IMG/VR virus record: IMGVR_UViG_3300021964_009390
Location: 62,001 to 126,000 of that record
DNA length: 64,000 bases
Strand: one strand, 5' to 3'
The translations under genes and the position numbers were made by a program. Of this stretch, positions 3,592 through 50,569 are shown in pieces. The notes under the pieces are model-generated. The model was given only the letters and a program-made list of their open reading frames with translations, searched no databases and was not told the origin of the DNA. Within the stretch, counting starts at the first letter, position 1. The number at the start of each line of letters is the position of its first letter.

Positions 3592-3594
3592 GGG

Positions 3595-4209: not shown

Positions 4210-4210
4210 G

Positions 4211-4780: not shown

Positions 4781-4892
4781 ACATATAATAATTCATGTTG
4801 CACCACCAAAGACTGACGATGAAACAAAATCTACCGTTGCGGAAAAATTTGCAAAAGACATTGAATATTTCGGATACAAATTTGGAGAATAA
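4755..4892 (+). pseudogene. 45-aa internally deleted sulfotransferase (N-terminal PSB loop fused to constant C-terminus)
   Basis: Translates MTTRLGRNKHIIIHVAPPKT-DDETKSTVAEKFAKDIEYFGYKFGE*; 5' part matches the start of the 5745 gene, 3' part matches the shared sulfotransferase tail. Confidence 0.75.
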
Positions 4893-4895
4893 GAT

Positions 4896-5675: not shown

Positions 5676-5744
5676 CTTTGATTGCCGGAAGTTATTTTTA
5701 CAATTCACACTTGTTACGAAGACGATACATTGATTCAGATATAA

Positions 5745-6767
5745 ATGAAATTTCCAATAATGAAAAATAAACATATAATAATTCATGTTGGACCAGCAAA
5801 AACTGGAACATCTGCATTACAATATTTTTTATTAAAAAATCGCGAAGAACTCGAGAAAGCTGGATACTATTATCCGGATCACCGGGTAGATCAAAACGGT
5901 GTAGGTGGAGGTCATGCGAATCCACGTAGATTTAATATTAAAAATATCATAAACAATTTTTTAGAATCAAATTCAAAACATCATACATTAATATTATCAT
6001 CAGAAGACTTCTTCGTAAAGATAAACGAACTCAATAAAATATGCGCAAGTATTAAGTTTGTCTCGTTTTATCGTTGTAGTATTTACCAGTCATTATCCGG
6101 TTATATTCAAAAAATAAAACGTAAAAATCAAACCGATAAATTTAAACGGCACAAAATAGATAGATCGCCTAATGATACCCACCTTGATAATTTGAAAATT
6201 AAAAATATTAATTACACAATAATTCCGTATATGTTCGATTTTGATAACACTTGGTCAATTGTTAATGAATTTTTGAGGTTTATTGATAATAGTAACGTAT
6301 TGAGTCATATGTATGAAAACAAAATAAAAATTGTGAATCCATCATACTGTATAGAGGCAATAGAACTTAAGAGGTTTATTAATAACAATATTAACGATAT
6401 CAACGTTGATAATAATAAATCTACCATACTTGAGTTGGATGTAATACTACAGAAATTTACAGAGGGTGTGAATGATTTTTCTTTTTTAAAAGATGAACAA
6501 TTTGAAGAAAATAAAAAAATAGAAATATTGTTTTTAGAAAATATAATTATAAATTACAAACAACCGCAATTGAAAGTGATTTTAAATCATATGCAAAAAT
6601 CTAAAAATAAAAAATTTATAACACAACAATTATCAAAACAACAAATTGTTAAAATAGTGAAACATATTGCAAATGAGGATATAAACATACTTAAAAATAT
6701 TTTGCCTTATATTTCAAAAGATACGAATAATCCAATATACATAGAGATTAAAAATATTATCGAATGA
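5745..6767 (+). CDS. Sulfotransferase-fold protein
   Basis: IIHVGPAKTGTSALQ, YYP, LILSSEDF; very AT-rich; start could be 5760. Confidence 0.7.
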   Translation: MKFPIMKNKHIIIHVGPAKTGTSALQYFLLKNREELEKAGYYYPDHRVDQNGVGGGHANPRRFNIKNIINNFLESNSKHHTLILSSEDFFVKINELNKICASIKFVSFYRCSIYQSLSGYIQKIKRKNQTDKFKRHKIDRSPNDTHLDNLKIKNINYTIIPYMFDFDNTWSIVNEFLRFIDNSNVLSHMYENKIKIVNPSYCIEAIELKRFINNNINDINVDNNKSTILELDVILQKFTEGVNDFSFLKDEQFEENKKIEILFLENIIINYKQPQLKVILNHMQKSKNKKFITQQLSKQQIVKIVKHIANEDINILKNILPYISKDTNNPIYIEIKNIIE

Positions 6768-16904: not shown

Positions 16905-16980
<76 letters not shown>

Positions 16981-18306: not shown

Positions 18307-18382
18307 GCCACCTTAGCTCAGCTGGTAGAGCGGCTCACTTGTAATGAGCAGGTCGTCGGTTCGATCCCGACAGGTGGCTCCA
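18307..18382 (+). tRNA. tRNA-Thr(TGT)
   Basis: 76-nt cloverleaf, anticodon loop CTTGTAA, GGTTCGATC T-arm, encoded CCA. Confidence 0.95.
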
Positions 18383-26353: not shown

Positions 26354-26880
26354 ATGAGCCCGGTGTATTATAGACATGACTCGATCATCAGCTGCAGTGA
26401 CTCGGACCTGTCCACAATAGAATTTTGCGAACGTAACAATTATAAACAACACAAAATGAACAACATGATGAGACTATTAAAAGCGTTGGGTAATATAGCC
26501 CGTTACACCTGTCTGGGCTGGTACAACACGTACAATCACGTGATAGATTCGTTGGAACGACACGAGAACGTGTGTAAAAAGCGTGTGAATCGTGACAAAA
26601 ACACGGAAAAATATCAGAAAAACCAGCTGAATGAGGCGCCCAAGCTGTGAGAAACCTAGGAGCTTCATGGGAACAACCAGAAATACACGAAATACTAGGA
26701 AACAATTTAAACCAATGATACCACTACAGGATGAAAGGGCAACAAATAATATCCCCGTCCAGTGTAGTATGTATCCGGCAACTAATCATATGTCAACTGA
26801 AAAAAACAGGAGAAACAGTTGTTGCCATCTAATCATCTAGACTACATAATAATATAACAATCAGAAAACATTATCAGACC

Positions 26881-27099
26881 ATGCCAAGAACCAACACTCA
26901 AGCCGACTCGGCGCTAGCAGAAATGGTAGCAGATGCTGCCCCCGAGCAAACCTTCACACTGCAACAAATATCTGACAAGACCGGTCTGAGTGCCGAGCGA
27001 GTCAGACAGATCGAACGTCAGGCGCTACGACGATTCAGAAGCGGAATCGAGGACTGGCTCAAACGAGAAGGATTCGACGAGTACTTGCCAGACCTGTAA
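26881..27099 (+). CDS. Stand-alone sigma-70 region 4 HTH protein
   Basis: FTLQQISDKTGLSAERVRQIERQALRRFR matches sigma70 r4.2 (TL.E.G..F.VTRERIRQIE.KAL.KLR). Confidence 0.85.
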   Translation: MPRTNTQADSALAEMVADAAPEQTFTLQQISDKTGLSAERVRQIERQALRRFRSGIEDWLKREGFDEYLPDL

Positions 27100-27145
27100 C
27101 ACTTTCCCAAAGGCCGTCCCCACCTGATAATCCTGAACTAATCCC

Positions 27146-27181
27146 ACCTCTCGAGTCTGACGGCGCTCGAGAGGTTTTTTT
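27146..27181 (+). terminator. Rho-independent terminator
   Basis: CCTCTCGAG...CTCGAGAGG followed by T6. Confidence 0.75.
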
Positions 27182-27327
27182 GTGGTCGATTCAATCAACC
27201 TATTTGGTGGGACAGGTTGATAAAATGAAAAAATATCCACCTATCCCCTCCCACACAAACCATCACTCTACACTTTACTGTTGAGAAAAAAGTTGTCCTT
27301 TAGAGCAGCTTTTGATATAATTGTATT

Positions 27328-27420
27328 ATGTTCAGCGATAGAGGCAGTTAGAAAAAACAGACAGACCCACTTTCAGGGAAGGTGATTGAGTTTGCTGCTG
27401 TCCTATAATATCACGAATAT
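27328..27420 (+). ncRNA. Candidate rod-shaped small RNA
   Basis: Starts 6 nt after TTGTCC-17-TATAAT; only a 7-codon ORF; nested pairings ATGTTC/GAATAT, GATA/TATC, GGCAGT/GCTGTC, CAGAC/GTTTG, CACTTT/AAGGTG. Confidence 0.5.
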
Positions 27421-27461
27421 GGGGAGGACCATTCCGAAATATATATATATGGCCCACACAC

Positions 27462-27492
27462 AAAAAAAGAGTGGCCTGTTCTGACCACTCTT
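27462..27492 (-). terminator. Rho-independent terminator of the leftward island operon
   Basis: AAGAGTGG..CCACTCTT with T-run on the minus strand. Confidence 0.75.
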
Positions 27493-27517
27493 GACAGTTA
27501 TGGGTTAGGCTTAAATT

Positions 27518-27721
27518 CTACTGTTCTTCATCAACATCTCCACTTATATGGAACACACAATCCTCTTCTCCTGATCCTGAATGTTCTATAGAACTGATGA
27601 ACACACTACTATTACCATAATAGCTGGTTCGATGCTCTCCATCCAAACACACCTCAAATGAGATGTTGTCTGTATCTTGAAAATCTCTATCCAATCTCTC
27701 CTTCAATTCTCCTACTGTCAT
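27518..27721 (-). CDS. Small acidic early protein
   Basis: MTVGELKERL..; AGGAGG RBS. Confidence 0.7.
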   Translation of the reverse strand: MTVGELKERLDRDFQDTDNISFEVCLDGEHRTSYYGNSSVFISSIEHSGSGEEDCVFHISGDVDEEQ

Positions 27722-27722
27722 A

Positions 27723-27887
27723 TTATTTGTCCTCCTTACTGTAATCTGCAAATGAGTAGCTTTCAACACTATCCTGAATCATCTCCATCACAATATCAAA
27801 AGCCTCTTCTTCATCAAAATGATCTCCAGGAAATGTTGATTCAATTTGATCTATACATTCTTTAACTAATTCTTTTAACTTATCCAT
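27723..27887 (-). CDS. Small acidic early protein (54 aa, absent from ORF track)
   Basis: MDKLKELVKECIDQIESTFPGDHFDEEEAFDIVMEMIQDSVESYSFADYSKEDK; own TTGTCC-17-GATAAT promoter. Confidence 0.7.
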   Translation of the reverse strand: MDKLKELVKECIDQIESTFPGDHFDEEEAFDIVMEMIQDSVESYSFADYSKEDK

Positions 27888-27923
27888 AATTGTATTATCT
27901 TATAATTTGATCTAAAGGACAAC

Positions 27924-28091
27924 TTATTTGTAAAGTATGTCACTAAATTCATATTTCAAACTGTCTTTCAAATCCTCATAAACAGCTATTCTGATTCCTT
28001 CTTCTCCATAACTCTCATAATCTCCACTTCTCTTCAAATCAGCTCTCATCTGGTCCATCATATACTCTATCAATTCTTTCAACCTATCCAT
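27924..28091 (-). CDS. Small acidic early protein (55 aa, absent from ORF track)
   Basis: MDRLKELIEYMMDQMRADLKRSGDYESYGEEGIRIAVYEDLKDSLKYEFSDILYK; RBS AGAAAGGAAAGTT. Confidence 0.7.
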   Translation of the reverse strand: MDRLKELIEYMMDQMRADLKRSGDYESYGEEGIRIAVYEDLKDSLKYEFSDILYK

Positions 28092-28105
28092 AACTTTCCT
28101 TTCTA

Positions 28106-28345
28106 TTATTTTAAAACCTTATCTATTTCAGATTTAGCTACATCCTCAATAGCCATATTAGTATTTGTCATCACATTCTCTTCAGTATTCAACATCACTC
28201 CCTCTCTATCATCAGAAGAAGCTGCATCATACTCACCATCCTCCTCATTCATCTCTCTCAATTCAGTTAAGGATTGGAGATAGAATGTTTTGATGAAATG
28301 TTCAAACTGCTCAAAACTTATATCCTTTTCAGTATCAATTATCAT
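28106..28345 (-). CDS. Small acidic early protein
   Basis: Leaderless ATG after TTGTCC-17-TATAAT. Confidence 0.7.
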   Translation of the reverse strand: MIIDTEKDISFEQFEHFIKTFYLQSLTELREMNEEDGEYDAASSDDREGVMLNTEENVMTNTNMAIEDVAKSEIDKVLK

Positions 28346-28351
28346 AAAATG

Positions 28352-28453
28352 ATTATATGAAGAGCTGATGAAATGGACAACTTTTTCTCCCAGAAAAAAT
28401 CAGGTGCGCCAGGGAGAGAAAAAGTTGCAGGTTTGAGCAGTTTTCACTATCAT
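28352..28453. promoter_or_regulatory. Back-to-back divergent early promoters within a 12-bp inverted repeat
   Basis: CAACTTTTTCTC 28378-28389 / GAGAAAAAGTTG 28416-28427; -10 boxes at 28352-28357 (-) and 28448-28453 (+). Confidence 0.8.
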
Positions 28454-28459
28454 GTTAAT

Positions 28460-28579
28460 ATGGAAAGAGAATATTACATAATGGAAGTAGAAGGAGCAGG
28501 ATGTTATTGTTTATGTTATGATGATGTAGATGGTAATAGAGTTGTTGTGGATTGGGATTTAGAGATAAGGGAGGACTAA
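28460..28579 (+). CDS. 39-aa acidic early protein
   Basis: Leaderless ATG; only 3 C in 120 nt. Confidence 0.65.
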   Translation: MEREYYIMEVEGAGCYCLCYDDVDGNRVVVDWDLEIRED

Positions 28580-28642
28580 AAGTTGTCCTTTTTGCTAGGA
28601 GGATTTAAAATAAGATTTTAAATTAGTAAAGAAAGGAAAGTT

Positions 28643-28813
28643 ATGAGAGAAGAATTGAAAAAGATTTTAGTGATTAGTTTGTATGATGGAAGTAATGAGA
28701 TTGATGAAGTGGATGAGGAGATGATGAGAGAGATTGAGAGGAGTAGTGAGAAGTGTAAGAAGGGTGATAAGGTGATTTGGATGGATGAAGAGTTTATGTA
28801 TTTGGAATTGTAA
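28643..28813 (+). CDS. 56-aa acidic early protein encoded without any cytosine (absent from ORF track)
   Basis: MREELKKILVISLYDGSNEIDEVDEEMMREIERSSEKCKKGDKVIWMDEEFMYLEL; promoter TTGTCC(28583)-17-TAAAAT, RBS AGAAAGGAAAGTT. Confidence 0.75.
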   Translation: MREELKKILVISLYDGSNEIDEVDEEMMREIERSSEKCKKGDKVIWMDEEFMYLEL

Positions 28814-28851
28814 AAGTTGTCCTTTTCAAATGATCACCTTATAATTAGAGC

Positions 28852-29067
28852 ATGAAAAGGATTAGAAGTTACAGTTTTGGATATGATATTGACAACATTA
28901 AAGATGTGCAATCTTATGTGATTGACAATTATGATGAAGGAGATTACAACATCCATATTGCTAGAGGAGATGATGTGATGAATTATATGACAATCTTGAG
29001 AGGAGAAGATGAGGAGTTGGATGGATTGATCGACAGTTGTTATGGTGAGGGTGATTTTGAAGAATAA
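28852..29067 (+). CDS. Highly acidic small early protein
   Basis: Leaderless ATG after TTGTCC-17-TATAAT; Asp/Glu-rich. Confidence 0.7.
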   Translation: MKRIRSYSFGYDIDNIKDVQSYVIDNYDEGDYNIHIARGDDVMNYMTILRGEDEELDGLIDSCYGEGDFEE

Positions 29068-29106
29068 AAAGTTGTCCATTTGAGCAGCAGACACTATTAT
29101 CATAAT

Positions 29107-29322
29107 ATGGAAGAAGAAAACAACATATGGGAACAAATGGAAACGCACATGCACGAGAATCTGGGAACGTACGGACTCAAGATGATGGATGCATTTTTAG
29201 ATTTGAAAGAATCAGCTGAAGATTGCGGAATGTGTCCGCAAGACACTCCTGAACGTCAGGAACGATTTGAACAGATGAATGGAGAGGCTCATGCTCCAGG
29301 AAGCAGACAACCATCTGAATAA
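29107..29322 (+). CDS. Small acidic protein with CxxC
   Basis: Leaderless ATG after TTGTCC-17-TATTAT. Confidence 0.65.
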   Translation: MEEENNIWEQMETHMHENLGTYGLKMMDAFLDLKESAEDCGMCPQDTPERQERFEQMNGEAHAPGSRQPSE

Positions 29323-29362
29323 AAAGTTGTCCATTCAAGCAGCAGACGCTATTATATAAACA

Positions 29363-29479
29363 ATGAAGATAAGATCTACGATACGCGCCAAGGCCACTCA
29401 GGCCCACGCACGACACAACAAGACGCTGGATCGTAAGCGCAAACACAGGAAGGATTATAAGTTATGTTCACAATATTAA
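29363..29479 (+). CDS. 38-aa basic peptide (RKRKH motif)
   Basis: ATG 7 nt after TATTAT; MKIRSTIRAKATQAHARHNKTLDRKRKHRKDYKLCSQY. Confidence 0.45.
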   Translation: MKIRSTIRAKATQAHARHNKTLDRKRKHRKDYKLCSQY

Positions 29480-29658
29480 GAGGAAAGACCGCCATCATCG
29501 ACTGTCAAGATCTACAAGCCGCGATACGATTCGTGCAGAGTCTGGAGAGCGGAATGAATCGTCACAAGGATCATTCACCATACACCATCGTCAAGGCGGA
29601 GGATGTGGAACGACCAGGTGTGAAGATCGGAGCACCTGACGCGTTCGTCACAAACTAA
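29464..29658 (+). CDS. Hypothetical protein
   Basis: AAGGA RBS. Confidence 0.55.
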   Translation: MFTILRGKTAIIDCQDLQAAIRFVQSLESGMNRHKDHSPYTIVKAEDVERPGVKIGAPDAFVTN

Positions 29659-29744
29659 AAGTTGACCGTCTGAGCACCAGAGCATACAATTAAGAATAAT
29701 CAGGCAATCAAGCCATCAAACAAAATATAAGGAAAATAACAGTT

Positions 29745-30074
29745 ATGTCAAAAGGAAAAAACACTCGCAAAGCAAAAGTATTTTACACATTACAAGACGC
29801 GTACGGCAAGGACGTGCGCATCGACTTGAACAACTATCGAGTCATCTGCAACAAGACCGGCAAACGCAAGAGCTTCTATCACAAGTACTTGTTCAATCTG
29901 ATCAGTCGCAAGTACGAAAGCAACATCGATCGCTTCAGAACCGAGTATACTAGCAGAGAGGCCGCTCCCAGCAAGAACGAACGACGCGCCAAGCAGCTTC
30001 AGGCACGCATCGATCGTCTGTACAACCAGATTCGAGAGCTCAAAGCCACAAGAAACGAGCTGGTTGTTGACTAA
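29745..30074 (+). CDS. Basic hypothetical protein (C..TG..Y..Y.SREA), related to 40983
   Basis: Promoter 29662-29690, AAGGA RBS, terminator downstream. Confidence 0.7.
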   Translation: MSKGKNTRKAKVFYTLQDAYGKDVRIDLNNYRVICNKTGKRKSFYHKYLFNLISRKYESNIDRFRTEYTSREAAPSKNERRAKQLQARIDRLYNQIRELKATRNELVVD

Positions 30075-30099
30075 ATTTCTTCCATAACTGATCCTAACC

Positions 30100-30138
30100 A
30101 GGGGCTGGTGAATAGAGTAGCCAGCCCCTCTTGTTTTT
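30100..30138 (+). terminator. Rho-independent terminator
   Basis: AGGGGCTGG...CCAGCCCCT followed by CTTGTTTTT. Confidence 0.7.
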
Positions 30139-30176
30139 AAGTTGACATCACCCATGAAACATCATACAATAAACAT

Positions 30177-30806
30177 ATGAAAACGATAACCACACTAGTC
30201 ACTCTGATGATCGTGTCAGTTGCATCAGCAGCGATCATCGACCGAAACAGGGACGGCATCCCTGACACCACTCGTGAATGGAACGTGCCAGAGTTCACCG
30301 ATCAGAACATTCATGGATTCACACCCAGCGACTCGTTGGCAGGAGCGTTACGAATGGCAGCACGCAACTCGCTGGAGCCTGATCCGTTCGGTGCCGACAC
30401 AACCAACACCAGAACACGACCTTTGACTCCTGATCAGAAACGATTGAACGAGCAGCTGTTGGCCAGATACAAACAAGAGTTAGAAGCTCATCTGAACAAC
30501 ATCACTCCTGAACCAGATGAGGACACGCTGCAGGCTCAGATCGCTCGATTGAACCAAGAGTATGTGAACCGAGCTGCAGAACTTGACCGAGTGATTCAAC
30601 TGGATGGTACAGTGGTGACACGTGACAACACTGACGCCAACTCGACTGGTCAATCATCCGCTTACGAATCAGATTCAGAATCGAATCAACTGGCCATGGC
30701 CGCCATTGGAGGTGGAGGCTTGCTTGCCGGACTCGCCAGTGGTGTTGTGGCATGGAGAAGGCGTCGAGAAACTGACCCGGCTGCTCTAGAAACAACCACG
30801 CTCTGA
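30177..30806 (+). CDS. Exported protein with DxNxDG Ca-binding-like loop and C-terminal TM plus RRRR anchor
   Basis: Signal peptide ..VASA; DRNRDGIPD; AMAAIGGGGLLAGLASGVVAWRRRR. Confidence 0.7.
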   Translation: MKTITTLVTLMIVSVASAAIIDRNRDGIPDTTREWNVPEFTDQNIHGFTPSDSLAGALRMAARNSLEPDPFGADTTNTRTRPLTPDQKRLNEQLLARYKQELEAHLNNITPEPDEDTLQAQIARLNQEYVNRAAELDRVIQLDGTVVTRDNTDANSTGQSSAYESDSESNQLAMAAIGGGGLLAGLASGVVAWRRRRETDPAALETTTL

Positions 30807-31425: not shown

Positions 31426-32016
31426 ATGCTGAGCCATGAACATAAGTATATTTTTCTCCATGTACCCAAGTGCGGAGGTTCTTCTGTAGTTGCAGCACTG
31501 TCGAGACACCCACATAGCAAAAAATTCAAAACTGGGCACCCGGTGCTGGCTAGTTACTTCGATGAGTTCGGTGATAATGTCCGGGATTACTTTATTTTCT
31601 CCATTGTGAGGAATCCGTTCGCAAGAGCGGTCAGTGCGTTCAAGTACCTTCAAAAAGGAGGAAGTAAAAGTTCATCAGACATAAGAGACCGAGATCAATT
31701 TGACATGAAAGGCTTGGATTTTAATAAATTTGTATTGAAATATTTTGACCAAAAAACACCTCTACATTTTCGTTCTCAAGCGGCATTTATAGGTGAATAT
31801 TTTAAACATGTAGACTATATTGGTAAACTCGAAAATATACAGTTGGATTTTGATAATATTTGTGACAAAATTGGAATCTCAAGAAAAAAACTTCCACATG
31901 TGAATAAAACCAATCACTTGCATTACACCGAGTATTATGATGATGAAACTCGTGAACTTGTTACAGAACGATACGCAAGAGATATTGAATTGTTTGGTTA
32001 CGAATTTGGTGAATGA
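31426..32016 (+). CDS. Sulfotransferase family 2
   Basis: FLHVPKCGGSS, VRNPFARAVS, HFRSQ, shared tail. Confidence 0.9.
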   Translation: MLSHEHKYIFLHVPKCGGSSVVAALSRHPHSKKFKTGHPVLASYFDEFGDNVRDYFIFSIVRNPFARAVSAFKYLQKGGSKSSSDIRDRDQFDMKGLDFNKFVLKYFDQKTPLHFRSQAAFIGEYFKHVDYIGKLENIQLDFDNICDKIGISRKKLPHVNKTNHLHYTEYYDDETRELVTERYARDIELFGYEFGE

Positions 32017-32630
32017 TATATGGACCTCGATGTATGAAGAAAACAATTTATATAAGGATGCCAAGATGTGGATCTTTTACAGTGGTCAGTCTTTGTGAAA
32101 AAAATAATATTAAATATTACGGTGGTAGAGATATGGGTTTTTGGAACTATAATACAAACCATACAAAGAATACTTCACCGAAACTGTACAAATGCGTAGA
32201 AAACTATGTAAATGAAAAAGTGTATAATGAAAGTTTCATCTTTACAACTGTAAGGAATCCGTATTCCCGTGCAGTTTCAATGTATAAACACGAATCATGG
32301 GACTCCGCGAGAACTTTCAGCGACTTTTGTAATAAACTTATAAGAGATGAATACCCTTCAAAATTTGCAAAATGGCATAGCTCCACCTTGACAGAGCATA
32401 TTGTCGATAAGGATATTCTCAAAGTTGATTTTGTAGTCAAACTTGAAAATTTTCAACAAGACTTCGATACGGTCTGCGACAAAATAGGGATACCACGTCA
32501 ACAACTTCCACATGAAAACAAATCAAAACACAAACACTACACCGAATACTATGATGAAGAAACAAAACAAATTGTTGCGGAACGATACGCACGTGACATC
32601 GAGTTGTTCGGGTATGAATTTGATAAATAA
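32013..32630 (+). CDS. Sulfotransferase family 2
   Basis: YIRMPRCGS, VRNPYSRAVS, shared tail. Confidence 0.88.
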   Translation: MIYGPRCMKKTIYIRMPRCGSFTVVSLCEKNNIKYYGGRDMGFWNYNTNHTKNTSPKLYKCVENYVNEKVYNESFIFTTVRNPYSRAVSMYKHESWDSARTFSDFCNKLIRDEYPSKFAKWHSSTLTEHIVDKDILKVDFVVKLENFQQDFDTVCDKIGIPRQQLPHENKSKHKHYTEYYDEETKQIVAERYARDIELFGYEFDK

Positions 32631-32635
32631 CTAAC

Positions 32636-33364
32636 ATGAAAGCTATAGTGCAGAGTTGCGACAGATATCACAGTATGGCTCAAAACATGCTGGTTCAATA
32701 CGAAAAATTATGGCCATCTAATCCTTTTACATTCAGGGTCCCATGGAATGAAAAATATCCAGAAGTTATAGAAAATCAATTTGGAAGTAAAATAGAATTA
32801 ATTAACGCTGGAATTAAATTTAAGCAAACATTTCATGCACTAACTAAAGATCTTGATGACAATGACTGGGTTTATTGGTGTATTGATGACAGATACCTAA
32901 TAAGCATTGAAGAAGGGGAAGCTAATCAAGTTCTTAATTTTGTAGAATCAATTAAAAACCCTAACATCATTAATGTGTGCTTTCATTTTGTCAGGTATAT
33001 AAAAGATTCTGCAAATTGTATACAAAGAGAAGGCTCAGGTGTAGAAATTTATTTTGAAAACTTGAGATTTATACAACACAAATCTTTTATCAACAATTGG
33101 TTGCACCAATTTTTTAGAGTTAAAGCGTTAAGAGAGTTCTGGAGGCACATAGAAGAGCCACCTCAATATCAAGCCATACAAATGGATTACAGCACAAAAC
33201 CTTTAAATGGAATTTCTTTAACTTTAGACCATAATATATCCAGGTACGGAGAAAGCACGGAGGGGGGAACGATCACAAAAAATTGTCAAAATAGTTGTAT
33301 TGAAAATAATATATCAATCCCAAAAATTTTTTTATCAAAAAAACAAAAAACAATTATTATTTAA
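32636..33364 (+). CDS. Putative GT-A-like glycosyltransferase
   Basis: VQSCDRY, WP, VYWCIDDRY (DxD-like); AT-rich cargo gene. Confidence 0.5.
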   Translation: MKAIVQSCDRYHSMAQNMLVQYEKLWPSNPFTFRVPWNEKYPEVIENQFGSKIELINAGIKFKQTFHALTKDLDDNDWVYWCIDDRYLISIEEGEANQVLNFVESIKNPNIINVCFHFVRYIKDSANCIQREGSGVEIYFENLRFIQHKSFINNWLHQFFRVKALREFWRHIEEPPQYQAIQMDYSTKPLNGISLTLDHNISRYGESTEGGTITKNCQNSCIENNISIPKIFLSKKQKTIII

Positions 33365-33367
33365 AAT

Positions 33368-33400
33368 CAGGACATTGAGTATTTTGGGTACGAATTCGAA
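33368..33400 (+). repeat. Orphan copy of the sulfotransferase 3' constant sequence
   Basis: 30/33 identical to 34006-34038 (encodes QDIE.FGYEFE) but intergenic. Confidence 0.8.
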
Positions 33401-33462
33401 CAAACGTCCAAAAAAGAATGGTAATACAGTAATGGATCAGGCTAAATAATTATATTATTAAT

Positions 33463-34044
33463 ATGATCAACCACAAACACAAATTTATTTTTATTCACAT
33501 ACCAAGAACTGGTGGGACTAGTATAGAGCAACAGTTTAGTTATAATGGAGATCGTTCTGGAGACGGAAAAAAACATTGGAATCTAGATCAATACAAAGAT
33601 GTATTATCCAACGAACAATTTGATAATTATTTTAAATTCACTTTCATCAGGAACCCCTGGGATATTGTAATTTCTAAATATATGGATAGAGGTTGGTATT
33701 CTAGCCCCATCAAAGGAAGGGGCGGTAAAATTGGATATTATTCCGGGCAAAAGTTAAGTTATTTTTTAAATCATTATCAACCCGCCAGACATGAGTATGG
33801 AGATAGTTTTTTTGATTATTTCAACCCCAAACAAATTGATTTTGTTGGCCGTTTTGAAGATAGAAGGAAAGGTTTAAATTTTATATCAAAAAAAATCGGC
33901 ATTAATCTTAATCCTCAAACTAAATCTAGATCCAATTCTGACAAAAAACACTACACCGAATACTACGATGATGAGACAAGACAAATGGTTGCGGAAAGAT
34001 ATGCACAGGACATTGAGTTGTTCGGGTACGAATTCGAATCGTGA
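33463..34044 (+). CDS. Sulfotransferase family 2
   Basis: FIHIPRTGGTS, IRNPWD..IS, VGRFE, shared tail. Confidence 0.9.
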   Translation: MINHKHKFIFIHIPRTGGTSIEQQFSYNGDRSGDGKKHWNLDQYKDVLSNEQFDNYFKFTFIRNPWDIVISKYMDRGWYSSPIKGRGGKIGYYSGQKLSYFLNHYQPARHEYGDSFFDYFNPKQIDFVGRFEDRRKGLNFISKKIGINLNPQTKSRSNSDKKHYTEYYDDETRQMVAERYAQDIELFGYEFES

Positions 34045-34856
34045 ATATAAAAAATATTAATACAATTAAGTTATTTTCTGATCCACTGTTCGATGCGCAT
34101 TTTTCTGTCGATCCTGGTTCTAAATTTTTAATATTTAAATCAATAGATTTTAAAACGGTAAGTGCTACATTAAAAGTAGATCCGGTGAGTCTGGTTAAAT
34201 TTTTAAACGATATATGTATGGAGATGTATAGAAATGGTAAAACTAATGGTATACCTCGAGATGTGTCGATAAATTTACATGATCATTATTTTTGTGCGGA
34301 AACTATAAGAGATATATATTCAGGTATTATTTCTGACCTGCTAGCGGACAATAGTGAATGGAGTACAAACGAAATTGTTTCATTTGGGTTTTTATGCGGT
34401 AACACTAAACCTCAAAGATTGAAATACATTGAAATGGGTAAAAGTTTTTCTCAACTAAACTACATATCGACAAAAAAATACAATAGGTACTCCAAAGATA
34501 CAGACGGCTTCACAAGCGTGATAAAATTAAAAAAAGATTATAAGTATTTTATCGATTTAACCGGTCATAGCTACAGTACTAAAACATATCAATTTCTAGC
34601 ATCCAAACGCGTATACTTCACTTCTAAACATAATGAGATTTTAGACTGGGAAGCAAATCACTTAAAACCCTGGGAAAATTACATCCCGGTTGAAGATGAT
34701 CTTTCAGATCTTATAAGTAAATATCAAACAATAGAATCAAACCCGGTATTATATAAAAAAATTATTAAAAATAATACCAATTTGATAGCAAATCAACTCT
34801 CTCATAAATTAATGTTACAGCATTTAATAAAGACTATTTCAGCGTACATTATATAA
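34041..34856 (+). CDS. Glycosyltransferase family 90 (CAP10-like)
   Basis: YKYFIDLTGHSYS....L, LKPWENYIPV..DLSDL. Confidence 0.75.
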   Translation: MNIKNINTIKLFSDPLFDAHFSVDPGSKFLIFKSIDFKTVSATLKVDPVSLVKFLNDICMEMYRNGKTNGIPRDVSINLHDHYFCAETIRDIYSGIISDLLADNSEWSTNEIVSFGFLCGNTKPQRLKYIEMGKSFSQLNYISTKKYNRYSKDTDGFTSVIKLKKDYKYFIDLTGHSYSTKTYQFLASKRVYFTSKHNEILDWEANHLKPWENYIPVEDDLSDLISKYQTIESNPVLYKKIIKNNTNLIANQLSHKLMLQHLIKTISAYII

Positions 34857-34903
34857 ATATAAGGAAGTTGAAAAATAATCAATTGTAGTTAATTATATAT
34901 ATT

Positions 34904-34975
34904 ATGAGAGTAGCTGTAACTGGAACTGCGTGTGTAGGTAAAAGCACATTTGTGAATGATTTTTTAAAAAATTGA
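34904..34975 (+). pseudogene. Truncated P-loop kinase/ATPase N-terminus
   Basis: MRVAVTGTACVGKSTFVNDFLKN*: intact Walker A then stop. Confidence 0.65.
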
Positions 34976-34976
34976 T

Positions 34977-35612
34977 ATGAACATCAATTTATATGTGTCA
35001 TACTATAAGGATAAAATAAACGAGAGGAATCTGGAGCTAGAGCAGTGCCTGCTCGGTAATCTAACCAATGCCGCGGTAGACAACGTATATCTGCTAGCTG
35101 AAAACACCCCACCAAAACGGTTTCGGACTAACAGTAAAGTCACTGTCATACCACATAAACGACCCACGTTCACCAATTTTTTCAACATTGTGAACGACAC
35201 AACAGGTGCAAAGGATCTGAACATAGTCGTGAACAGTGACATCTACCTACCGGACAACATCGCGGACATACACCCTCATGTGAGTATGGACACAGTAGCA
35301 TGCATGTCCCGGTGGGAGTTACAATCTGATGGTTCGCTTGTACAGGCACGCGGACCACGTGGTGACAGCCAGGACGCGTGGATGTGGAGAGGCAAGATTC
35401 GCGAGGTGGATTACAGTGACTTCAACCTGGGTGTACTGGGTTGTGACAATCGAATAGCCTGGGAGTTCATGAACGTGGGTTATCGATTGATAAATCCATG
35501 CGAGACATTCAAAATAGCCCATGTACACAACTCCAAAGTCAGAAATTACAGATACAATGATCTGAATGACAAAGTGTCTGGACCATACCAGTTTGTGTCA
35601 CATAGCGCATGA
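34977..35612 (+). CDS. Putative glycosyltransferase-like protein
   Basis: VVNSDIY, SRWE, DSQDAW, LG..GCDNRI, HVH. Confidence 0.6.
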   Translation: MNINLYVSYYKDKINERNLELEQCLLGNLTNAAVDNVYLLAENTPPKRFRTNSKVTVIPHKRPTFTNFFNIVNDTTGAKDLNIVVNSDIYLPDNIADIHPHVSMDTVACMSRWELQSDGSLVQARGPRGDSQDAWMWRGKIREVDYSDFNLGVLGCDNRIAWEFMNVGYRLINPCETFKIAHVHNSKVRNYRYNDLNDKVSGPYQFVSHSA

Positions 35613-36199
35613 TAAGTCACGAGCATAAATTTCTTTTCATTCATGTGCCACGGACAAGTGGTAGCAGCATCGAGATACAGTTTAAATACAACGATGCAGG
35701 TATGTGGATGGTAAACTATGATGGTCGTAAGCATTGGACATTGAACCAATGGAAAGAACATTTAGAACCGGAAGTATTTGAAACATATTTCAAATTCACA
35801 ATTGTCCGGAATCCTTGGGACCGGGTAATCAGCAAATATTGTACACGTAATGAGTTTGGACCGATCGGACAACCGGCCGGAAAATCACTGAAATATTTTC
35901 TAGACAATTACAAAACTCCCGGGAACGAACATGGAGAGACCTTGATTGATTATTTCGATCCGGAGCAGATGGATTACATCGGTAGATTTGAATCTAGAGA
36001 GGACACATTAACATATGTGTCACAGAAAATTGGTGTAGAAATAGACAATAGCTACAAGCTTAGACCAGTACAAGCCACGATCAAGCAACAAAACGATAAC
36101 CATCATTACACCGAATACTATGATGAAGAAACAAAACAAATTGTTGCGGAACGATACGCACGTGACATCGAGTTGTTCGGGTATGAATTTGGTGACTAA
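35609..36199 (+). CDS. Sulfotransferase family 2
   Basis: FIHVPRTSGSS, VRNPWDRVIS, IGRFE, shared tail. Confidence 0.9.
   Translation: MISHEHKFLFIHVPRTSGSSIEIQFKYNDAGMWMVNYDGRKHWTLNQWKEHLEPEVFETYFKFTIVRNPWDRVISKYCTRNEFGPIGQPAGKSLKYFLDNYKTPGNEHGETLIDYFDPEQMDYIGRFESREDTLTYVSQKIGVEIDNSYKLRPVQATIKQQNDNHHYTEYYDEETKQIVAERYARDIELFGYEFGD
36107..36191 (+). repeat. 85-nt perfect direct repeat of 32538-32622
   Basis: TACACCGAATACTATGATGAAG...GGGTATGAATTTG identical in both copies. Confidence 0.9.
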
Positions 36200-37859: not shown

Positions 37860-38732
37860 ATGAAACTCAAGAGAAAAATTTTGATAATGGGGCTCCCGGG
37901 TGCAGGTAAAACTACACTGGCGGAATTGTTGGTACAAAAGCTATGCGCAGTGTGGTTCAATGCGGACGCTGTTCGTCAAGAGATCAGCAAAGATCTTGGT
38001 TTCACAGCAAATGATAGACTAGAGCATTCACGACGCATGGGTAAAATGTGTGAATTCGCTAGTAAATTCGGAACCTGGGCCATAGCCGATTTTGTATGTC
38101 CCACCAATAAAGCTAGAGAGCTGTTCGATGCAGACTACATAATCTGGGTGGATCGAATCAAGGAAGGTAGATTTGAAGATACAAACAAGATGTTCGAACC
38201 ACCAGCGAATGCAGATCTTGTGTTGAGAGACGGTACACCACAAGAGTGGTTGGAACAGTCCATGGATCTTTTGAAACCGGAGCTATGGGACAATCAAGCT
38301 CCAACCGCGTTGTTGATTGGCCGTTATCAACCATTCCATAAAGGACATAAAACACTAGTGGCCGAAGCCATCAAACGTACCGGGCAATGCTGCATAGCTC
38401 TTAGAGACGTGGGGGGAAAGGATGATAGTAATCCATATGACTTTCAGCAAGTGAAACGTGAGATACACGCGGCATGTCCGGAGTTTGGTGACAAAATAAA
38501 AGTTGTCGAGCTCCCCAACATCACCGATGTATTTTACGGTAGAGGTGTGGGTTACAACATAGAACAACTGGAACTAGACAAGAGCATCCAGGAAATATCG
38601 GCCACCAAGATTCGCAAAGGTGAGATAGACCAACAAGGTAACAAATTGAACAAAAACACAGGTGGTCACAATCCGTTCACTGGAGAAGGTCTCCAAGTTG
38701 ACACACAAAACACAGACCGACGTTACGAGTGA
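37860..38732 (+). CDS. cysC: Adenylyl-sulfate kinase (CysC-like) fused to HIGH nucleotidyltransferase
   Basis: MGLPGAGKTT, NADAVR...DLGFT..DR, FVCP, FEPP; second domain IGRYQPFHKGH ... ISATKIR. Confidence 0.8.
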   Translation: MKLKRKILIMGLPGAGKTTLAELLVQKLCAVWFNADAVRQEISKDLGFTANDRLEHSRRMGKMCEFASKFGTWAIADFVCPTNKARELFDADYIIWVDRIKEGRFEDTNKMFEPPANADLVLRDGTPQEWLEQSMDLLKPELWDNQAPTALLIGRYQPFHKGHKTLVAEAIKRTGQCCIALRDVGGKDDSNPYDFQQVKREIHAACPEFGDKIKVVELPNITDVFYGRGVGYNIEQLELDKSIQEISATKIRKGEIDQQGNKLNKNTGGHNPFTGEGLQVDTQNTDRRYE

Positions 38733-49867: not shown

Positions 49868-50569
49868 TTATATAGTCGTTACGGCATGTTGATACAGCTT
49901 CATATCTAATGAATTGTGCATCATCTCACTAACTATCTGTCGCTCAAATGGTGTAGTGTTATTATTTTTTTGCCGGTTGAGTATTTCTAGCTTGCATGTT
50001 TGTTTATTTTCAATTTTAAAATCAGTGCATATATTTTTAATTACTTCTGTAAGTTGATCGTTTATTTTTTCTAGAATTAACGTGTATGTTATATTGTCAT
50101 AATCTTTACATATTGTATCTATATCATTGGATTGACTTACATACTCACACATCAAACTGGAGTAAGATAAACAGTATTTTTTGAGTGTTTCAGCCGGTAA
50201 CCTTCTCATAGGTTTATTGTCGAATTTAACTTTGTCAAAATAGTAATAATGACTTATCAAACGATCGACCGGATGTCTCAACACACATAATGATTTGCAG
50301 CTGTCAGATCTAGTGACTACATCATTGTTTTTTGTGTGACATAACACTATTTTTATCTGTTCTAAATGTTCATTCAACACCCCCATTGCAGCTACGTAAT
50401 CATCATTTGTGGTTAAATTTATACCCTTGTAATCGCAGTCACCAAACAGTGTTTGCGGAAAGTATATCTGTTGATGGGTGTATTTTGTAATAAATGCTTT
50501 GTATAGTAGTGAACGTACGCTAGTACCACCGCATTTTGGTATATGATAAAATATAAATTCCGGATTCAC
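49868..50569 (-). CDS. Sulfotransferase family 2
   Basis: FYHIPKCGGTS, LRHPVDRLISHYYY; lacks the shared 3' tail. Confidence 0.85.
   Translation of the reverse strand: MNPEFIFYHIPKCGGTSVRSLLYKAFITKYTHQQIYFPQTLFGDCDYKGINLTTNDDYVAAMGVLNEHLEQIKIVLCHTKNNDVVTRSDSCKSLCVLRHPVDRLISHYYYFDKVKFDNKPMRRLPAETLKKYCLSYSSLMCEYVSQSNDIDTICKDYDNITYTLILEKINDQLTEVIKNICTDFKIENKQTCKLEILNRQKNNNTTPFERQIVSEMMHNSLDMKLYQHAVTTI

What the first reader, a model, noticed from the sequence alone, without database searches (positions are those of the whole stretch)
28596..28820. A complete gene and its leader written with no cytosine
Seen: 28596-28820 (225 nt) has no C on the + strand. It spans the -10 box (28606), the leader, RBS AGAAAGGA and the whole 56-codon ORF 28643-28813. 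The run ends at the CC of the next promoter's -35. The protein therefore lacks Ala, Pro, Thr, His and Gln, and Ser, Arg and Leu use only AGT, AGR and TTR codons. At about 20% C the chance is 0.8^225, and flanking early genes are C-rich on the coding strand. Inference: this looks like selection on an immediate-early counter-defence gene. A C-free unit (a) cannot contain any G/C-containing palindromic restriction site, (b) can be transcribed without CTP, so would ignore CTP depletion or viperin-made ddhCTP, (c) has no C-rich Rho rut site and no ACA MazF-type site, and (d) has a G-free template strand, which matters if G is modified or ADP-ribosylated.
Basis: partly seen in the sequence, partly recalled or inferred. 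Interest (0 to 1): 0.88.

Follow-up and report, generated by a model that had tools for sequence, protein, structure and literature searches.

The report
Phage early genes written without cytosine
An uncultured marine jumbo phage and its relatives write a set of tiny, acidic, early-type genes with almost no cytosine on the coding strand (225 bases here, up to 2,197 bases and eight genes elsewhere), a bias too extreme to arise without a cytosine-specific purge and not described in any paper I could find.

Summary
In detail: 28596-28820 has no C, and the next longest C-free run in the window is 78 nt, in the adjacent gene. It is not one odd gene. It is the extreme of a 1.55-kb divergent cluster of seven tiny acidic genes, each behind a sigma-70-type promoter. 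Their coding strands carry 0-11% C, against 12-30% in the window's other called ORFs, on both arms. The 56-codon ORF is a conserved protein gene (75 metagenome loci, dN/dS about 0.17). In this phage it is an in-frame deletion fusion: the leader and five codons of gene X joined to gene Z. C avoidance acts on synonymous sites, amino-acid choice, leaders and spacers, in at least eight unrelated families. Relatives reach 345, 605 (one C), 1,343 and 2,197 C-free bases, with C-free promoters and A-U-only terminators. Plain mutation bias, protein composition and artefact do not explain this. The mechanism is unproven. My best guess is that C in these first messages is a per-base liability: C-dependent RNA cleavage, ddhCTP chain termination or CTP shortage. 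C is the only base a bacterial mRNA can lose entirely. Rivals act on the DNA strand. I found no prior report.

The parts
28596..28820 (+). C-free run of 225 nt. It runs from the promoter spacer and -10 through the leader and ORF to the base before the CC of the next -35.
28583..28611 (+). Sigma-70-type promoter of the unit: AAAGTTGTCC motif, -35 TTGTCC, 17-nt spacer, -10 TAAAAT. The last C before the run is at 28595.
28612..28642 (+). C-free leader with the Shine-Dalgarno-like AGAAAGGA (28630-28637). It is the same leader as that of gene X in relatives L005 and L008.
28643..28813 (+). g6, a 56-codon ORF with 0% C and 34.5% G. It is an in-frame fusion of gene X codons 1-5 (MREEL) to gene Z codon 2 onward (KKILVISLYDG...). 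The Z family is conserved under purifying selection. The model is a small beta-beta-alpha-beta-beta fold; net charge is about -8.
28817..28845 (+). Next promoter (TTGTCC-17-TATAAT). Its CC ends the C-free run. The ATG of g7 follows the -10 by 6 nt, a leaderless design.
28852..29067 (+). g7, a 71-aa acidic protein with 6.9% C on the coding strand.
28373..28579 (+). g5, an acidic protein with 8.7% C. Its conserved C-terminal part (from about 28460) holds the 78-nt C-free run 28498-28575. Its 5' end overlaps the minus-strand promoter.
28106..28345 (-). g4, a 79-aa acidic protein with 9.6% C on its coding (minus) strand.
27924..28091 (-). g3, a 55-aa acidic protein with 5.4% C. It lies within G-free runs of the + strand (27994-28041 and 28054-28130). 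It is a paralogue of g2.
27723..27887 (-). g2, a 54-aa acidic protein with 8.5% C.
27518..27721 (-). g1, a 67-aa acidic protein (ATG start) with 10.3% C. It is the last gene of the minus arm.
28352..28380 (-). Minus-arm promoter (TTGTCC-17-TATAAT). The ATG of g4 lies 6 nt after the -10.
27894..27922 (-). Second minus-arm promoter (TTGTCC-17-GATAAT). The ATG of g2 lies 6 nt after the -10.
27467..27492 (-). Intrinsic-terminator-like hairpin plus T run that closes the minus arm.
29072..29322 (+). Boundary of the C-poor cluster: the same promoter type (29072-29100) drives g8 (29107-29322), which has 17.6% C.

Best explanation
What it is (high confidence, about 0.9). The 225-nt run is one transcription unit of a modular early-gene cassette region in an uncultured 222-kb marine or estuarine phage. 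In that region cytosine is excluded from the coding (non-template) strand by a C-specific purge. The exclusion follows the direction of transcription on both arms of a divergent promoter cluster. It acts on codon choice, on amino-acid choice and on non-coding transcribed sequence. In related phages it reaches whole operons of up to eight genes without one C.

How it most likely works (inferred, about 0.4 in total). Each C in these first messages is a liability at the RNA level. A message made only of A, G and U cannot be cut by endoribonucleases whose sites contain C; most MazF/ChpBK/MqsR-type toxins are of that kind. It also cannot be chain-terminated by viperin-made ddhCTP or stalled by CTP shortage. 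Of these, I rate RNA cleavage and decay slightly ahead of CTP/ddhCTP. The tiny acidic proteins can therefore still be made in a cell where C-containing transcripts fail. After that, the phage's ordinary C-containing genes can be expressed.

C is the base that is dropped because it is the only one a bacterial mRNA can do without. AUG/GUG/UUG, UAA/UAG/UGA and GGAGG all lack C.

Shown here: the anatomy, the conservation, the purge at every kind of site, and the link to transcription direction. Inferred: early timing, RNA rather than DNA as the level of selection, the nature of the threat, and the function of the proteins.
For: Real and extreme. A 0.95-Mb control set has no run of 200 nt or more.

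Cluster-wide and tied to transcription direction: seven genes on two arms have 0-11% C on the coding strand, against 12-30% in the window's other called ORFs. GC skew goes from -0.72 to +1.0 across the divergent promoters.

Nucleotide-level purge:
- Arg is AGR in 19 of 20 codons (reference 39%)
- Leu is TTR in 25 of 27 (reference 52%)
- GAT is 45 of 55 Asp codons
- GGC, GTC and TGC are 0 of 27, 0 of 26 and 0 of 8
- A, P, T and Q are halved or worse

Leaders and spacers are also C-free. In window-type phages the Cs that remain between units sit in -35 boxes and promoter spacers.

It is not a property of one protein family. At least eight unrelated families plus singletons are affected.

Conserved over deep divergence: Z homologues at 35-39% identity sit in C-free blocks of 1,018 and 1,343 nt. 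L193 and L194 hold a 2,197-nt block of eight genes bounded by normal DNA. L076 uses C-free promoters and two A-U-only 15-16-bp hairpin terminators.

It is a real protein gene, with dN/dS about 0.17. In the near-C-free clade, synonymous T-to-C changes arise at about 70% of the A/G rate per site but are seen only on tips.

Zero C in 2,197 nt puts the equilibrium C frequency below about 0.14%. Ordinary mutation bias cannot give that.

A per-C cost rather than a bulk RNA property: genes with 8-10% C fold as strongly as normal genes (-17 to -23 kcal/100 nt). Only fully C-free RNA is unstructured (-6.9).

Half of the early promoters (165 of 336) place ATG 6 nt after the -10. That is a leaderless design, which suits translation under RNase or ribosome stress.
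Against: - There is no expression or host data. 'Early' rests only on promoter type.
- The same promoter type drives genes with normal C (g8, g9, 29745-30074).
- C content after these promoters is a continuum from 0 to 25%, and C has been regained inside the C-free clade (L004, L013).
- Residual C shows no avoidance of ACA (1.26x) or of TC/CC. It shows an unexplained five-fold avoidance of CpG, which no named RNase or ddhCTP predicts.
- In this window the first C lies 8 nt after the stop codon and no terminator follows. Strict CTP-free expression would leave the stop codon inside a stalled polymerase.
- In L193 and L076, stretches that look untranscribed (between a terminator and the next promoter) are also C-free. 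That fits a DNA-level cause better.
- Viperins are rare, and toxin RNases usually act after early genes are already made (my own knowledge).
Confidence: 0.4

Rival explanations
1. DNA-level protection of the displaced strand. During intense early transcription (bubbles, R-loops) the non-template strand is single-stranded. A host or phage single-strand-specific cytosine deaminase, or a dC-specific endonuclease, would then mutate or nick it at every C. Either such an enzyme has itself erased the Cs (enzyme-driven mutation), or selection has removed its substrate.
For: - The bias is strand-specific and follows transcription on both arms.
- It extends into apparently untranscribed spacers in L193 and L076.
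- C-free runs begin at about -13, where the promoter melts.
- New Cs appear only on tips, as expected if they are quickly converted.
- M, Y, F and C, which are products of C-to-T changes, are enriched.
Against: - At four-fold sites the lost C is not replaced mainly by T. Gly gains GGA, not GGT.
- C alternates with A, G and T about equally across the family.
- Residual C is enriched in TC and CC, the usual deaminase contexts.
- No anti-phage single-strand DNA cytosine deaminase turned up in the literature search.
- Units with the same promoters have normal C.
Confidence: 0.2
2. A universal restriction-proof island. Removing C from one strand removes every palindromic site that contains G or C, whatever the host's enzymes. 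The cassette that makes the first (anti-restriction?) proteins therefore stays intact, for example if it enters the cell first, as in the T5 first-step-transfer region or the T7 leading end.
For: - The cluster has the fewest G/C-containing palindromes in the window: 24 four-mers and 3 six-mers, against means of 67.8 (minimum 30) and 22.4 (minimum 9).
- Residual C avoids CG (0.1-0.19x) and GC (0.6-0.7x), the cores of such sites.
- Six-mers are somewhat below the cluster's own composition (3 against 10.2, z = -2.3).
- The products are small acidic proteins, as Ocr-like DNA mimics are.
Against: - A cut anywhere else still kills the genome.
- The cluster lies mid-contig, between ordinary genes on both sides, with divergent arms. 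That is not the layout of a leading end.
- Four-mer palindromes are no rarer than the composition predicts (23 against 28.2).
- Neighbouring genes with 5-10% C still carry GATC, AGCT and TGCA sites.
- There is no similarity to known anti-restriction proteins.
Confidence: 0.12
3. A bulk RNA property rather than a per-C cost. C-poor, G-rich sense RNA cannot be loaded by Rho, and when fully C-free it has almost no structure. The antisense RNA is C-rich and G-poor, an ideal Rho substrate. The asymmetry would then insulate densely packed divergent and convergent units and speed up translation of leaderless messages.
For: - C is far below G over hundreds of bases.
- The g6 RNA folds at -6.9 kcal/100 nt, against about -20 for other genes.
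- A promoter at 27293 fires into the minus arm in antisense.
- Many units are leaderless.
Against: - Returns diminish. Genes at 8-10% C fold like normal genes, and a rut site needs many Cs. Neither explains synonymous purging down to 0 in 2,197 nt.
- YC dinucleotides, Rho's binding unit, are over-represented among residual C.
- A-U hairpins are still used.
Confidence: 0.1
4. A G-free template. The injected DNA carries modified or damaged guanine (for example 7-deazaguanine derivatives, ADP-ribosyl-G or 8-oxoG) that host RNA polymerase reads badly. The first genes transcribed from the injected DNA are therefore written on a template without G.
For: - The template strand of g6, and of the long blocks, has no G by construction.
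- Only genes transcribed before replication would need this.
- The phage is rich in unusual transferases.
Against: - No guanine-modification gene was seen in the 64-kb window.
- Other units with the same promoters have normal G in the template.
- This does not explain CpG avoidance or the graded 5-10% state.
- It could not be tested here.
Confidence: 0.07
5. No selection at all: ordinary transcription- or replication-associated deamination bias (a purine-loading type of skew, perhaps around an origin at the divergent promoters) acting on fast-evolving, weakly constrained small genes.
For: - The cumulative GC skew has its minimum at about 28300, as at an origin.
- The state is graded, 0-11% in the cluster and 0-8% among homologues.
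- The region is hypervariable, and many contigs break there.
Against: - Zero C in 2,197, 1,343 and 1,018 nt needs C-loss rates about 700 times C-gain rates.
- The purge also reaches amino-acid choice in proteins under purifying selection (dN/dS 0.17).
- There is no T enrichment at Gly four-fold sites and no A-to-G shift.
- Adjacent genes are normal at synonymous sites.
Confidence: 0.06
6. Artefact or by-product: an assembly or bisulfite-like conversion error, or simply the codons of a very acidic protein.
For: Acidic residues use GAN codons. Some public runs are bisulfite libraries.
Against: - The same blocks, with normal C in their flanks, are found in independent JGI, ENA, TARA and Logan assemblies.
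- The ORFs are intact and conserved.
- Given the protein sequence, 13.2 C-containing codons are expected and none is seen.
- Non-coding parts are C-free too.
Confidence: 0.02

Closest known systems
Synthetic G-less / C-less cassettes used for in vitro transcription (my own knowledge, not checked here)
   Same: A transcribed unit that lacks one nucleotide throughout, so the polymerase can traverse it with three NTPs and halts at the first missing-base position just beyond it.
   Different: Those cassettes are man-made and non-coding. These are natural and protein-coding, up to eight genes long, with their own promoters, ribosome sites and, in L076, A-U-only terminators.
ACA-less mRNAs that resist MazF (single-protein-production system; my own knowledge)
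   Same: Synonymous recoding that removes a nuclease's recognition site from a message, so it alone is translated while other mRNAs are cut. Leaderless messages are also linked to MazF stress in the literature.
   Different: Only one trinucleotide is removed there. Here a whole base is removed, at the price of five amino acids. ACA is not specifically avoided among residual Cs (1.26x).
Sequence-avoidance footprints in viral genomes: restriction-site avoidance in phages, and the T5 first-step-transfer and T7 leading-end regions (my own knowledge)
   Same: A phage region expressed first, poor in restriction sites, encoding small acidic proteins.
   Different: The avoidance here is of a base on one strand, not of particular sites. 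The region is mid-contig and divergent. There is no similarity to Ocr, ArdA or T5 pre-early proteins.
Transcription- or replication-linked strand asymmetry: Szybalski purine loading, bacterial GC skew, vertebrate mitochondrial strand bias (my own knowledge)
   Same: G exceeds C on the coding or leading strand, and the skew changes sign at a divergence point.
   Different: Those biases are moderate, lie mainly at neutral sites and never reach zero. Here C is absent over kilobases, amino-acid use is reshaped, and genes a few hundred bases away are normal.
Modular early-gene cassettes: T4-type promoter-early stem-loop cassettes and the SPO1 host-takeover module (my own knowledge)
   Same: Arrays of very small ORFs, each with its own strong host-type promoter. 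Repeated regulatory sequences shuffle, delete and fuse cassettes; the X::Z fusion and the P-X-Y-Z, P-X-Z and P-X'Z variants show this.
   Different: There is no sequence relationship. C exclusion and the frequent leaderless layout are not features described for those modules.

Membership tests
Ordinary transcription/replication strand asymmetry (purine loading, GC skew) | The skew follows the direction of transcription or replication. | tested here: met
   Coding-strand C depletion is seen on both divergent arms. GC skew goes from -0.72 to +1.0.
Ordinary transcription/replication strand asymmetry (purine loading, GC skew) | The bias is moderate, concentrated at neutral sites, and does not reach zero. 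| tested here: not met
   There are 0 C in 225 nt here and in 2,197, 1,343 and 1,018 nt in relatives. The A, P, T, H and Q codons are eliminated.
Ordinary transcription/replication strand asymmetry (purine loading, GC skew) | A deamination signature: lost C replaced by T (and A by G). | tested here: inconclusive
   Val gains T and G. Gly gains A, not T. Purine-ending codons are unchanged. C alternates with A, G and T about equally.
C-less cassette logic (a message that can be made without CTP) | No C from the transcription start to the end of the unit. | tested here: met
   g6 is C-free from before the -10 to 8 nt past the stop codon. In L076 and L193 whole operons are C-free, including the A-U-only terminators.
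C-less cassette logic (a message that can be made without CTP) | Transcription and protein output persist without CTP or with ddhCTP. | not testable with these tools
   This needs in vitro transcription or expression assays.
Toxin-site-free mRNA (ACA-less, MazF-resistant) | The toxin's motif is depleted more than other contexts of the same base. | tested here: not met
   Among 1,993 residual Cs in 224 C-poor ORFs, ACA is 1.26x expectation and TCA is 2.1x. Only CG contexts are depleted (0.13-0.2x, apart from CCG at 0.61x).
Rho-resistant (rut-free) transcript | C far below G over 80 nt or more. | tested here: met
   The cluster genes have 0-11% C and 23-35% G.
Rho-resistant (rut-free) transcript | YC dinucleotides, the Rho primary binding unit, are preferentially removed. 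| tested here: not met
   Residual C is preceded by T at 1.36x and by C at 2.04x expectation.
First-entering anti-restriction region (T5 FST, T7 gene 0.3 type) | Depletion of restriction-type palindromes. | tested here: inconclusive
   Counts are the lowest in the window (24 and 3, against means of 67.8 and 22.4). Four-mers equal the composition expectation. Six-mers are mildly below it (z = -2.3).
First-entering anti-restriction region (T5 FST, T7 gene 0.3 type) | Location at the genome end that is injected first. | not testable with these tools
   The cluster lies at about 90 kb of a 222-kb contig, between ordinary genes. The physical ends are unknown.
First-entering anti-restriction region (T5 FST, T7 gene 0.3 type) | Encodes a recognisable anti-restriction protein (Ocr, ArdA and the like). 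| tested here: not met
   The seven proteins have no hit below the thresholds used: PHROG (best E 0.02-0.13), PADLOC (all seven) or Pfam (g4, g6 and g7 scanned). Foldseek against PDB gave no match below E = 0.5 for Z.
Modular early-gene cassettes (T4 PeSL type, SPO1 host-takeover type) | An array of tiny ORFs, each with its own host-type promoter of a repeated sequence. | tested here: met
   AAAGTTGTCC-N17-TAnnnT occurs 8 times in 27293-29690, against about 5 one-mismatch matches expected in the whole 64-kb window. There are 336-350 non-redundant copies in related loci.
Modular early-gene cassettes (T4 PeSL type, SPO1 host-takeover type) | Cassette gain, loss and fusion between relatives. | tested here: met
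   The layouts seen are P-X-Y-Z (L005, L008), P-X-Z (L012, L015) and P-X'::Z (window).
Modular early-gene cassettes (T4 PeSL type, SPO1 host-takeover type) | Sequence homology to T4 or SPO1 early genes, or a stem-loop after the promoter. | tested here: not met
   There is no DNA or protein match in 50,697 phage records. C-free leaders cannot form G-C stems.
Sequencing or assembly artefact (bisulfite-type conversion) | Conversion affects whole reads or contigs and is not reproducible between projects. | tested here: not met
   Flanks in the same contigs have normal C. The same blocks occur in JGI, ENA, TARA and Logan assemblies.

The most novel reading that the evidence does not exclude
Natural three-letter messages. 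A lineage of marine phages writes its first operons in A, G and U only, because C is the only base a translatable bacterial mRNA can lose. These messages can then be made and kept when cytidine is the host's point of attack: ddhCTP from viperins, CTP depletion, C-site RNases or cytosine deaminases. This would be a new layer of the phage-host arms race, fought at the level of the nucleotide alphabet, and a natural counterpart of the laboratory C-less cassette.
Probability: 0.3. Interest if true: 0.95.

Novelty: categorically new. Interest (0 to 1): 0.86.

Why it matters
If selection keeps whole operons free of one base, sequence composition itself can be a counter-defence or host-takeover device. 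A simple scan for base-free runs would then flag the very first genes a phage needs.

It would also point to a host activity that acts on cytidine in early phage RNA or on the displaced DNA strand. That activity may be a known one (viperin, C-site toxin RNases) with an unrecognised evolutionary footprint, or an unknown one.

The cassettes offer natural, compact test objects. Native and C-containing alleles of a 56-codon gene can be compared directly. The dozens of tiny acidic proteins are candidates for new inhibitors of host functions.

The finding also shows that functional proteins, promoters, ribosome sites and terminators can all be built from a 15-amino-acid, three-base repertoire.

Tried and rejected
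- Known phage relatives. There is no megablast, blastn or tblastn match of the region, of Z, of g4, of the 864-aa baseplate protein or of the L076 block in 50,697 phage records. RNR gives only distant hits. There is no Z homologue in 185,579 bacterial genomes, so neither host nor prophage could be named.
- Function of the proteins. PHROG gave only E of 0.02 or worse. Pfam and PADLOC gave nothing for the cluster proteins scanned. The AlphaFold model of Z has pLDDT 74, and Foldseek against PDB found nothing below E = 0.5.
- Non-coding RNA. There is no Rfam hit in 26500-30500.
- Promoter-motif scan of IMG/VR. The 15-mer was too unspecific and returned unrelated contigs. I reused them only as a composition control.
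- All units behind this promoter are C-free: rejected.
- Unstructured mRNA as the general driver: rejected for the 5-10% C genes.
- UV-dimer or TC-deaminase signature, ACA avoidance and YC avoidance: all rejected by the contexts of the residual C.
- UV robustness of the template: rejected by reasoning, because the template strand is 71% pyrimidine.
- tRNA or anticodon-nuclease explanations: rejected, because non-coding parts are C-free too and U-ending codons still need G34 tRNAs.
- Literature. Seven full-text searches and one passage lookup found no report of C-free phage genes. One search found no anti-phage single-strand DNA cytosine deaminase.
- Not attempted. I did not scan the public collections for long runs of 'not C', because the pattern would have had to be typed as a long repeated string.
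Full report
THE OBSERVATION. The + strand of 28596-28820 has no C. The window is 19.8% C. The next longest C-free runs are 78 nt (28498-28575, in the gene just upstream) and 58 nt. No run free of A, G or T exceeds 77 nt. The chance is about 2e-22 per position at uniform composition, and still about 7e-9 at the local level of about 8% C.

- promoter with -35 TTGTCC at 28583-28588 and -10 TAAAAT at 28606-28611
- a 31-nt leader with AGAAAGGA
- a 56-codon ORF at 28643-28813
- the end of the run at the CC of the next -35 (28817-28822)

Given the protein's own sequence and the window's codon usage, 13.2 codons with an avoidable C are expected and none is seen (P about 1e-8). For Ala, Pro, Thr, His and Gln together, 12.5 residues are expected and none is seen (P about 7e-7). 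As a control, 0.95 Mb of unrelated viral contigs contains no C- or G-free run of 200 nt or more; the longest is 154 nt.

THE SURROUNDINGS CHANGE THE PICTURE. The gene is not an island among C-rich neighbours. Positions 27518-29067 form a divergent cluster of seven tiny acidic ORFs: g1-g4 on the minus strand and g5-g7 on the plus strand (54-79 aa, net charge -5 to -14). Eight copies of the promoter AAAGTTGTCC-N17-TAnnnT lie in 27293-29690.

Coding-strand C is 10.3, 8.5, 5.4 and 9.6% on the minus arm and 8.7, 0.0 and 6.9% on the plus arm. The other ORFs called in the window, some of them shadow ORFs, have 12-30%. GC skew swings from -0.72 to +1.0 across the divergence point, so the bias follows the direction of transcription and not a fixed DNA strand. 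From g8 (29107) onward C is ordinary (17.6% and 23.6%), although the promoter type is the same.

Cluster-wide codon use shows a nucleotide-level purge:
- Arg is AGR in 19 of 20 codons (reference 39%)
- Leu is TTR in 25 of 27 (reference 52%)
- GAT is 45 of 55 Asp codons (reference 55%)
- GGC, GTC and TGC are absent
- P, T, A and Q are at 0.12-0.49 of the reference frequency, while E, D, M, Y and F are enriched

THE GENE IS REAL, AND IN THIS PHAGE IT IS A FUSION. The window belongs to a 222-kb IMG/VR contig from an estuarine or marine metagenome. It has no cultured relative. The ORF has 45 protein homologues and 75 metagenome loci. Median pairwise dN/dS is 0.17. The model is a small beta-beta-alpha-beta-beta fold with pLDDT 74 and has no structural or family match.

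Almost all homologues start at MKKILVISLYDG (gene Z). In relatives the same promoter and leader drive another gene, X (MREELEKIV...). X is followed either by Y and Z (L005, L008) or directly by Z (L012, L015). The window has the X leader and X codons 1-5 joined in frame to Z codon 2. This is a deletion across a short A-rich microhomology. The region is a set of shuffling cassettes, and many contigs break there.

THE PHENOMENON IS MUCH LARGER THAN THE FINDING. The 37 distinct Z genes carry 0-13 C per 159 nt. None has normal C. Third-position C is 0-5 of 53 codons. At least eight unrelated small acidic families plus singletons in these loci have under 10% C, and several have 0%. The C-free runs in relatives are listed below.

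| Locus | C-free run | Content |
|---|---|---|
| L015 | 345 nt | two genes |
| L008 | 322 + 282 nt, split by a single C | three genes |
| L005 | 339 + 173 nt | |
| L072 | 1,018 nt, runs off the contig | |
| L076 | 1,343 + 439 nt | |
| L193, L194 | 2,197 nt, bounded on both sides by DNA with ordinary C | 333 nt non-coding plus eight ORFs |

L072 and L076 carry Z homologues of only 35-39% identity, so the state has been held across deep divergence. In L076 the promoters are C-free (TTGATT-17-TATAAT). Two terminators there are 15-16-bp hairpins made only of A-U pairs, followed by nine U (z = -3.7 and -4.7). In window-type phages the runs start at about -13, inside the promoter, and stop at the next -35. 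The Cs that remain between those units sit in -35 boxes and promoter spacers.

WHAT KIND OF FORCE.
- Not protein composition: synonymous sites and non-coding parts are purged.
- Not an artefact: the same blocks, with normal flanks, occur in independent JGI, ENA, TARA and Logan assemblies.
- Not ordinary mutation bias: zero C in 2,197 nt bounds the equilibrium C frequency below about 0.14%. That would need C-loss rates about 700 times C-gain rates.
- Lost C is not simply turned into T. Gly shifts to GGA, Val to GTT and GTG, and purine-ending codons are unchanged. Across the family C alternates with A, G and T about equally.
- Within the near-C-free clade, synonymous divergence is substantial (dS 0.15-0.8). 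T/C changes arise at about 70% of the A/G rate per site, but the Cs are confined to tips. New Cs therefore appear and do not last.
- The purge is not absolute everywhere. Two lineages inside the clade regained 4-7 C. C content behind these promoters forms a continuum from 0 to 25%.

CLUES TO THE MECHANISM.
1. Genes with 8-10% C fold as strongly as ordinary genes (-17 to -23 kcal per 100 nt). Only fully C-free g6 (-6.9) and nearly C-free g3 (-9.9) are unstructured. Low RNA structure therefore cannot explain the partial state. A cost per C fits better than a bulk property.
2. Among 1,993 residual Cs in 224 C-poor ORFs, ACA is not avoided (1.26x), and TC and CC are over-represented (1.36x and 2.04x). 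That speaks against MazF-ACA, Rho YC units, UV dimers and TC-type deaminases. C followed by G is five-fold rare at all three codon positions. CpG observed/expected is 0.10 in the cluster against 0.90 window-wide. I cannot explain this.
3. The cluster has the fewest G/C-containing palindromes in the window (24 four-mers and 3 six-mers, against means of 67.8 and 22.4). This is mostly what its composition predicts.
4. Half of the related promoters (165 of 336) put ATG exactly 6 nt after the -10, a leaderless layout. Five promoters in the window do so.
5. In L193 and L076, stretches between a terminator and the next promoter are also C-free. That hints at a DNA-level cause, unless those stretches are read through.
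6. In the window the first C comes 8 nt after the stop codon with no terminator, so a strictly CTP-free cell would leave the stop codon inside a stalled polymerase.
7. C is the only base a bacterial message can lose. Start codons, stop codons and the Shine-Dalgarno core are all C-free. Any pressure to drop a base, or any base-directed threat that recoding can escape, must show up as loss of C.

VERDICT ON MECHANISM. I commit to an RNA-level, per-C liability (0.4 in total). C-less first messages escape C-dependent endoribonuclease cleavage, which I rate slightly first. They also escape ddhCTP chain termination and CTP shortage. Their small acidic products can therefore be made before the host's response is neutralised.

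The rivals are:
- protection of the displaced non-template DNA strand from a cytosine deaminase or dC-specific nuclease, or erasure of its Cs by such an enzyme (0.2)
- a universal restriction-proof island (0.12)
- Rho or structure insulation (0.1)
- a G-free template for modified or damaged G (0.07)
- plain mutation bias (0.06)
- artefact or by-product (0.02)

None of the first five can be settled without expression data, a host, or read-level population data.

COMPARISON WITH WHAT IS KNOWN. The layout (tiny ORFs, each behind a repeated strong host-type promoter, with cassettes shuffling) works like T4-type early cassettes or the SPO1 host-takeover module, but there is no homology. The composition works like a laboratory C-less cassette, or like an extreme extension of ACA-less, restriction-site-poor or purine-loaded sequences. 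It fails the defining features of each of these as a natural class (see the membership table). Seven full-text searches and one passage lookup found no report of C-free phage genes. I therefore rate it as a new kind of feature. The caveats are that the literature library is incomplete and that the mechanism is open.

Noticed in passing
window 28345, 27887, 28852, 29107, 29363 (ATG codons); related loci L002-L077: ATG lies exactly 6 nt after the -10 hexamer at five window promoters and at 165 of 336 non-redundant related promoters. Many of these early messages should therefore be leaderless. Others, such as g6, have a 31-nt leader with a strong ribosome site.
   Followed up: partly
window 27518-29067 and 224 C-poor ORFs in related loci: The few Cs that remain avoid being followed by G. 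CpG observed/expected is 0.10 in the cluster against 0.90 window-wide. NCG codons are 3% against 16%. C3 followed by G1 is 8% against 26%. No explanation was found.
   Followed up: partly
window 26881-27099 (+): A 72-aa protein that consists only of a sigma-70 region 4 domain (Pfam PF04545, E = 4.5e-9, above the cut-off). It lies next to the early cluster, ahead of a terminator. It could compete for -35 boxes or for the polymerase flap.
   Followed up: no
window 18-6767, 31426-36199, 37860-38732, 49868-52389: The window holds eight sulfotransferase-family ORFs, an APS-kinase-like ORF (37860-38732) and several glycosyltransferases (GT1, GT61, GT90, DUF5672). They sit mostly in low-GC islands (28-33% GC). 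This is an unusual load of sulfation genes for a phage. The target (host surface, virion or DNA) is unknown.
   Followed up: no
window 27293-27500 (+): An early-type promoter with an extended -10 (27293-27321) fires toward the end of the minus arm. It is followed by a 7-codon leaderless mini-ORF (27328) and about 140 nt without a convincing ORF. This may be a small or antisense RNA. The hairpin at 27467-27492 has a T run only on the minus-strand side.
   Followed up: no
L076 1250-1394: A 44-nt tandem duplication follows the A-U terminator. After it comes the only C-containing segment of the locus, which read on the minus strand is a near-consensus promoter (TTGACT-17-TATAAT with TG) pointing back into the C-free operon.
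   Followed up: no
window 27723-27887 and 27924-28091 (-): g2 and g3 share the N-terminus MD(K/R)LKEL and look like tandem paralogues. A related family member also occurs in L002.
   Followed up: no
window 16905-16980 and 18307-18382 (+): There are two phage tRNA genes, tRNA-Met (CAU) and tRNA-Thr (UGU). Thr is one of the five amino acids absent from g6.
   Followed up: no
L178 6075-6228; L160 4760-4889: In the unrelated control contigs the longest base-free runs are a 154-nt G-free stretch (contig with 31% GC) and a 130-nt C-free stretch (16% GC). They may be weaker cases of the same thing in other viruses.
   Followed up: no
loci L002, L014, L032, L033, L039, L042, L044, L066, L077: In many metagenome contigs the Z gene lies within about 1 kb of a contig end. 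The cassette region therefore tends to break assemblies, as expected for a hypervariable, repeat-flanked region.
   Followed up: no
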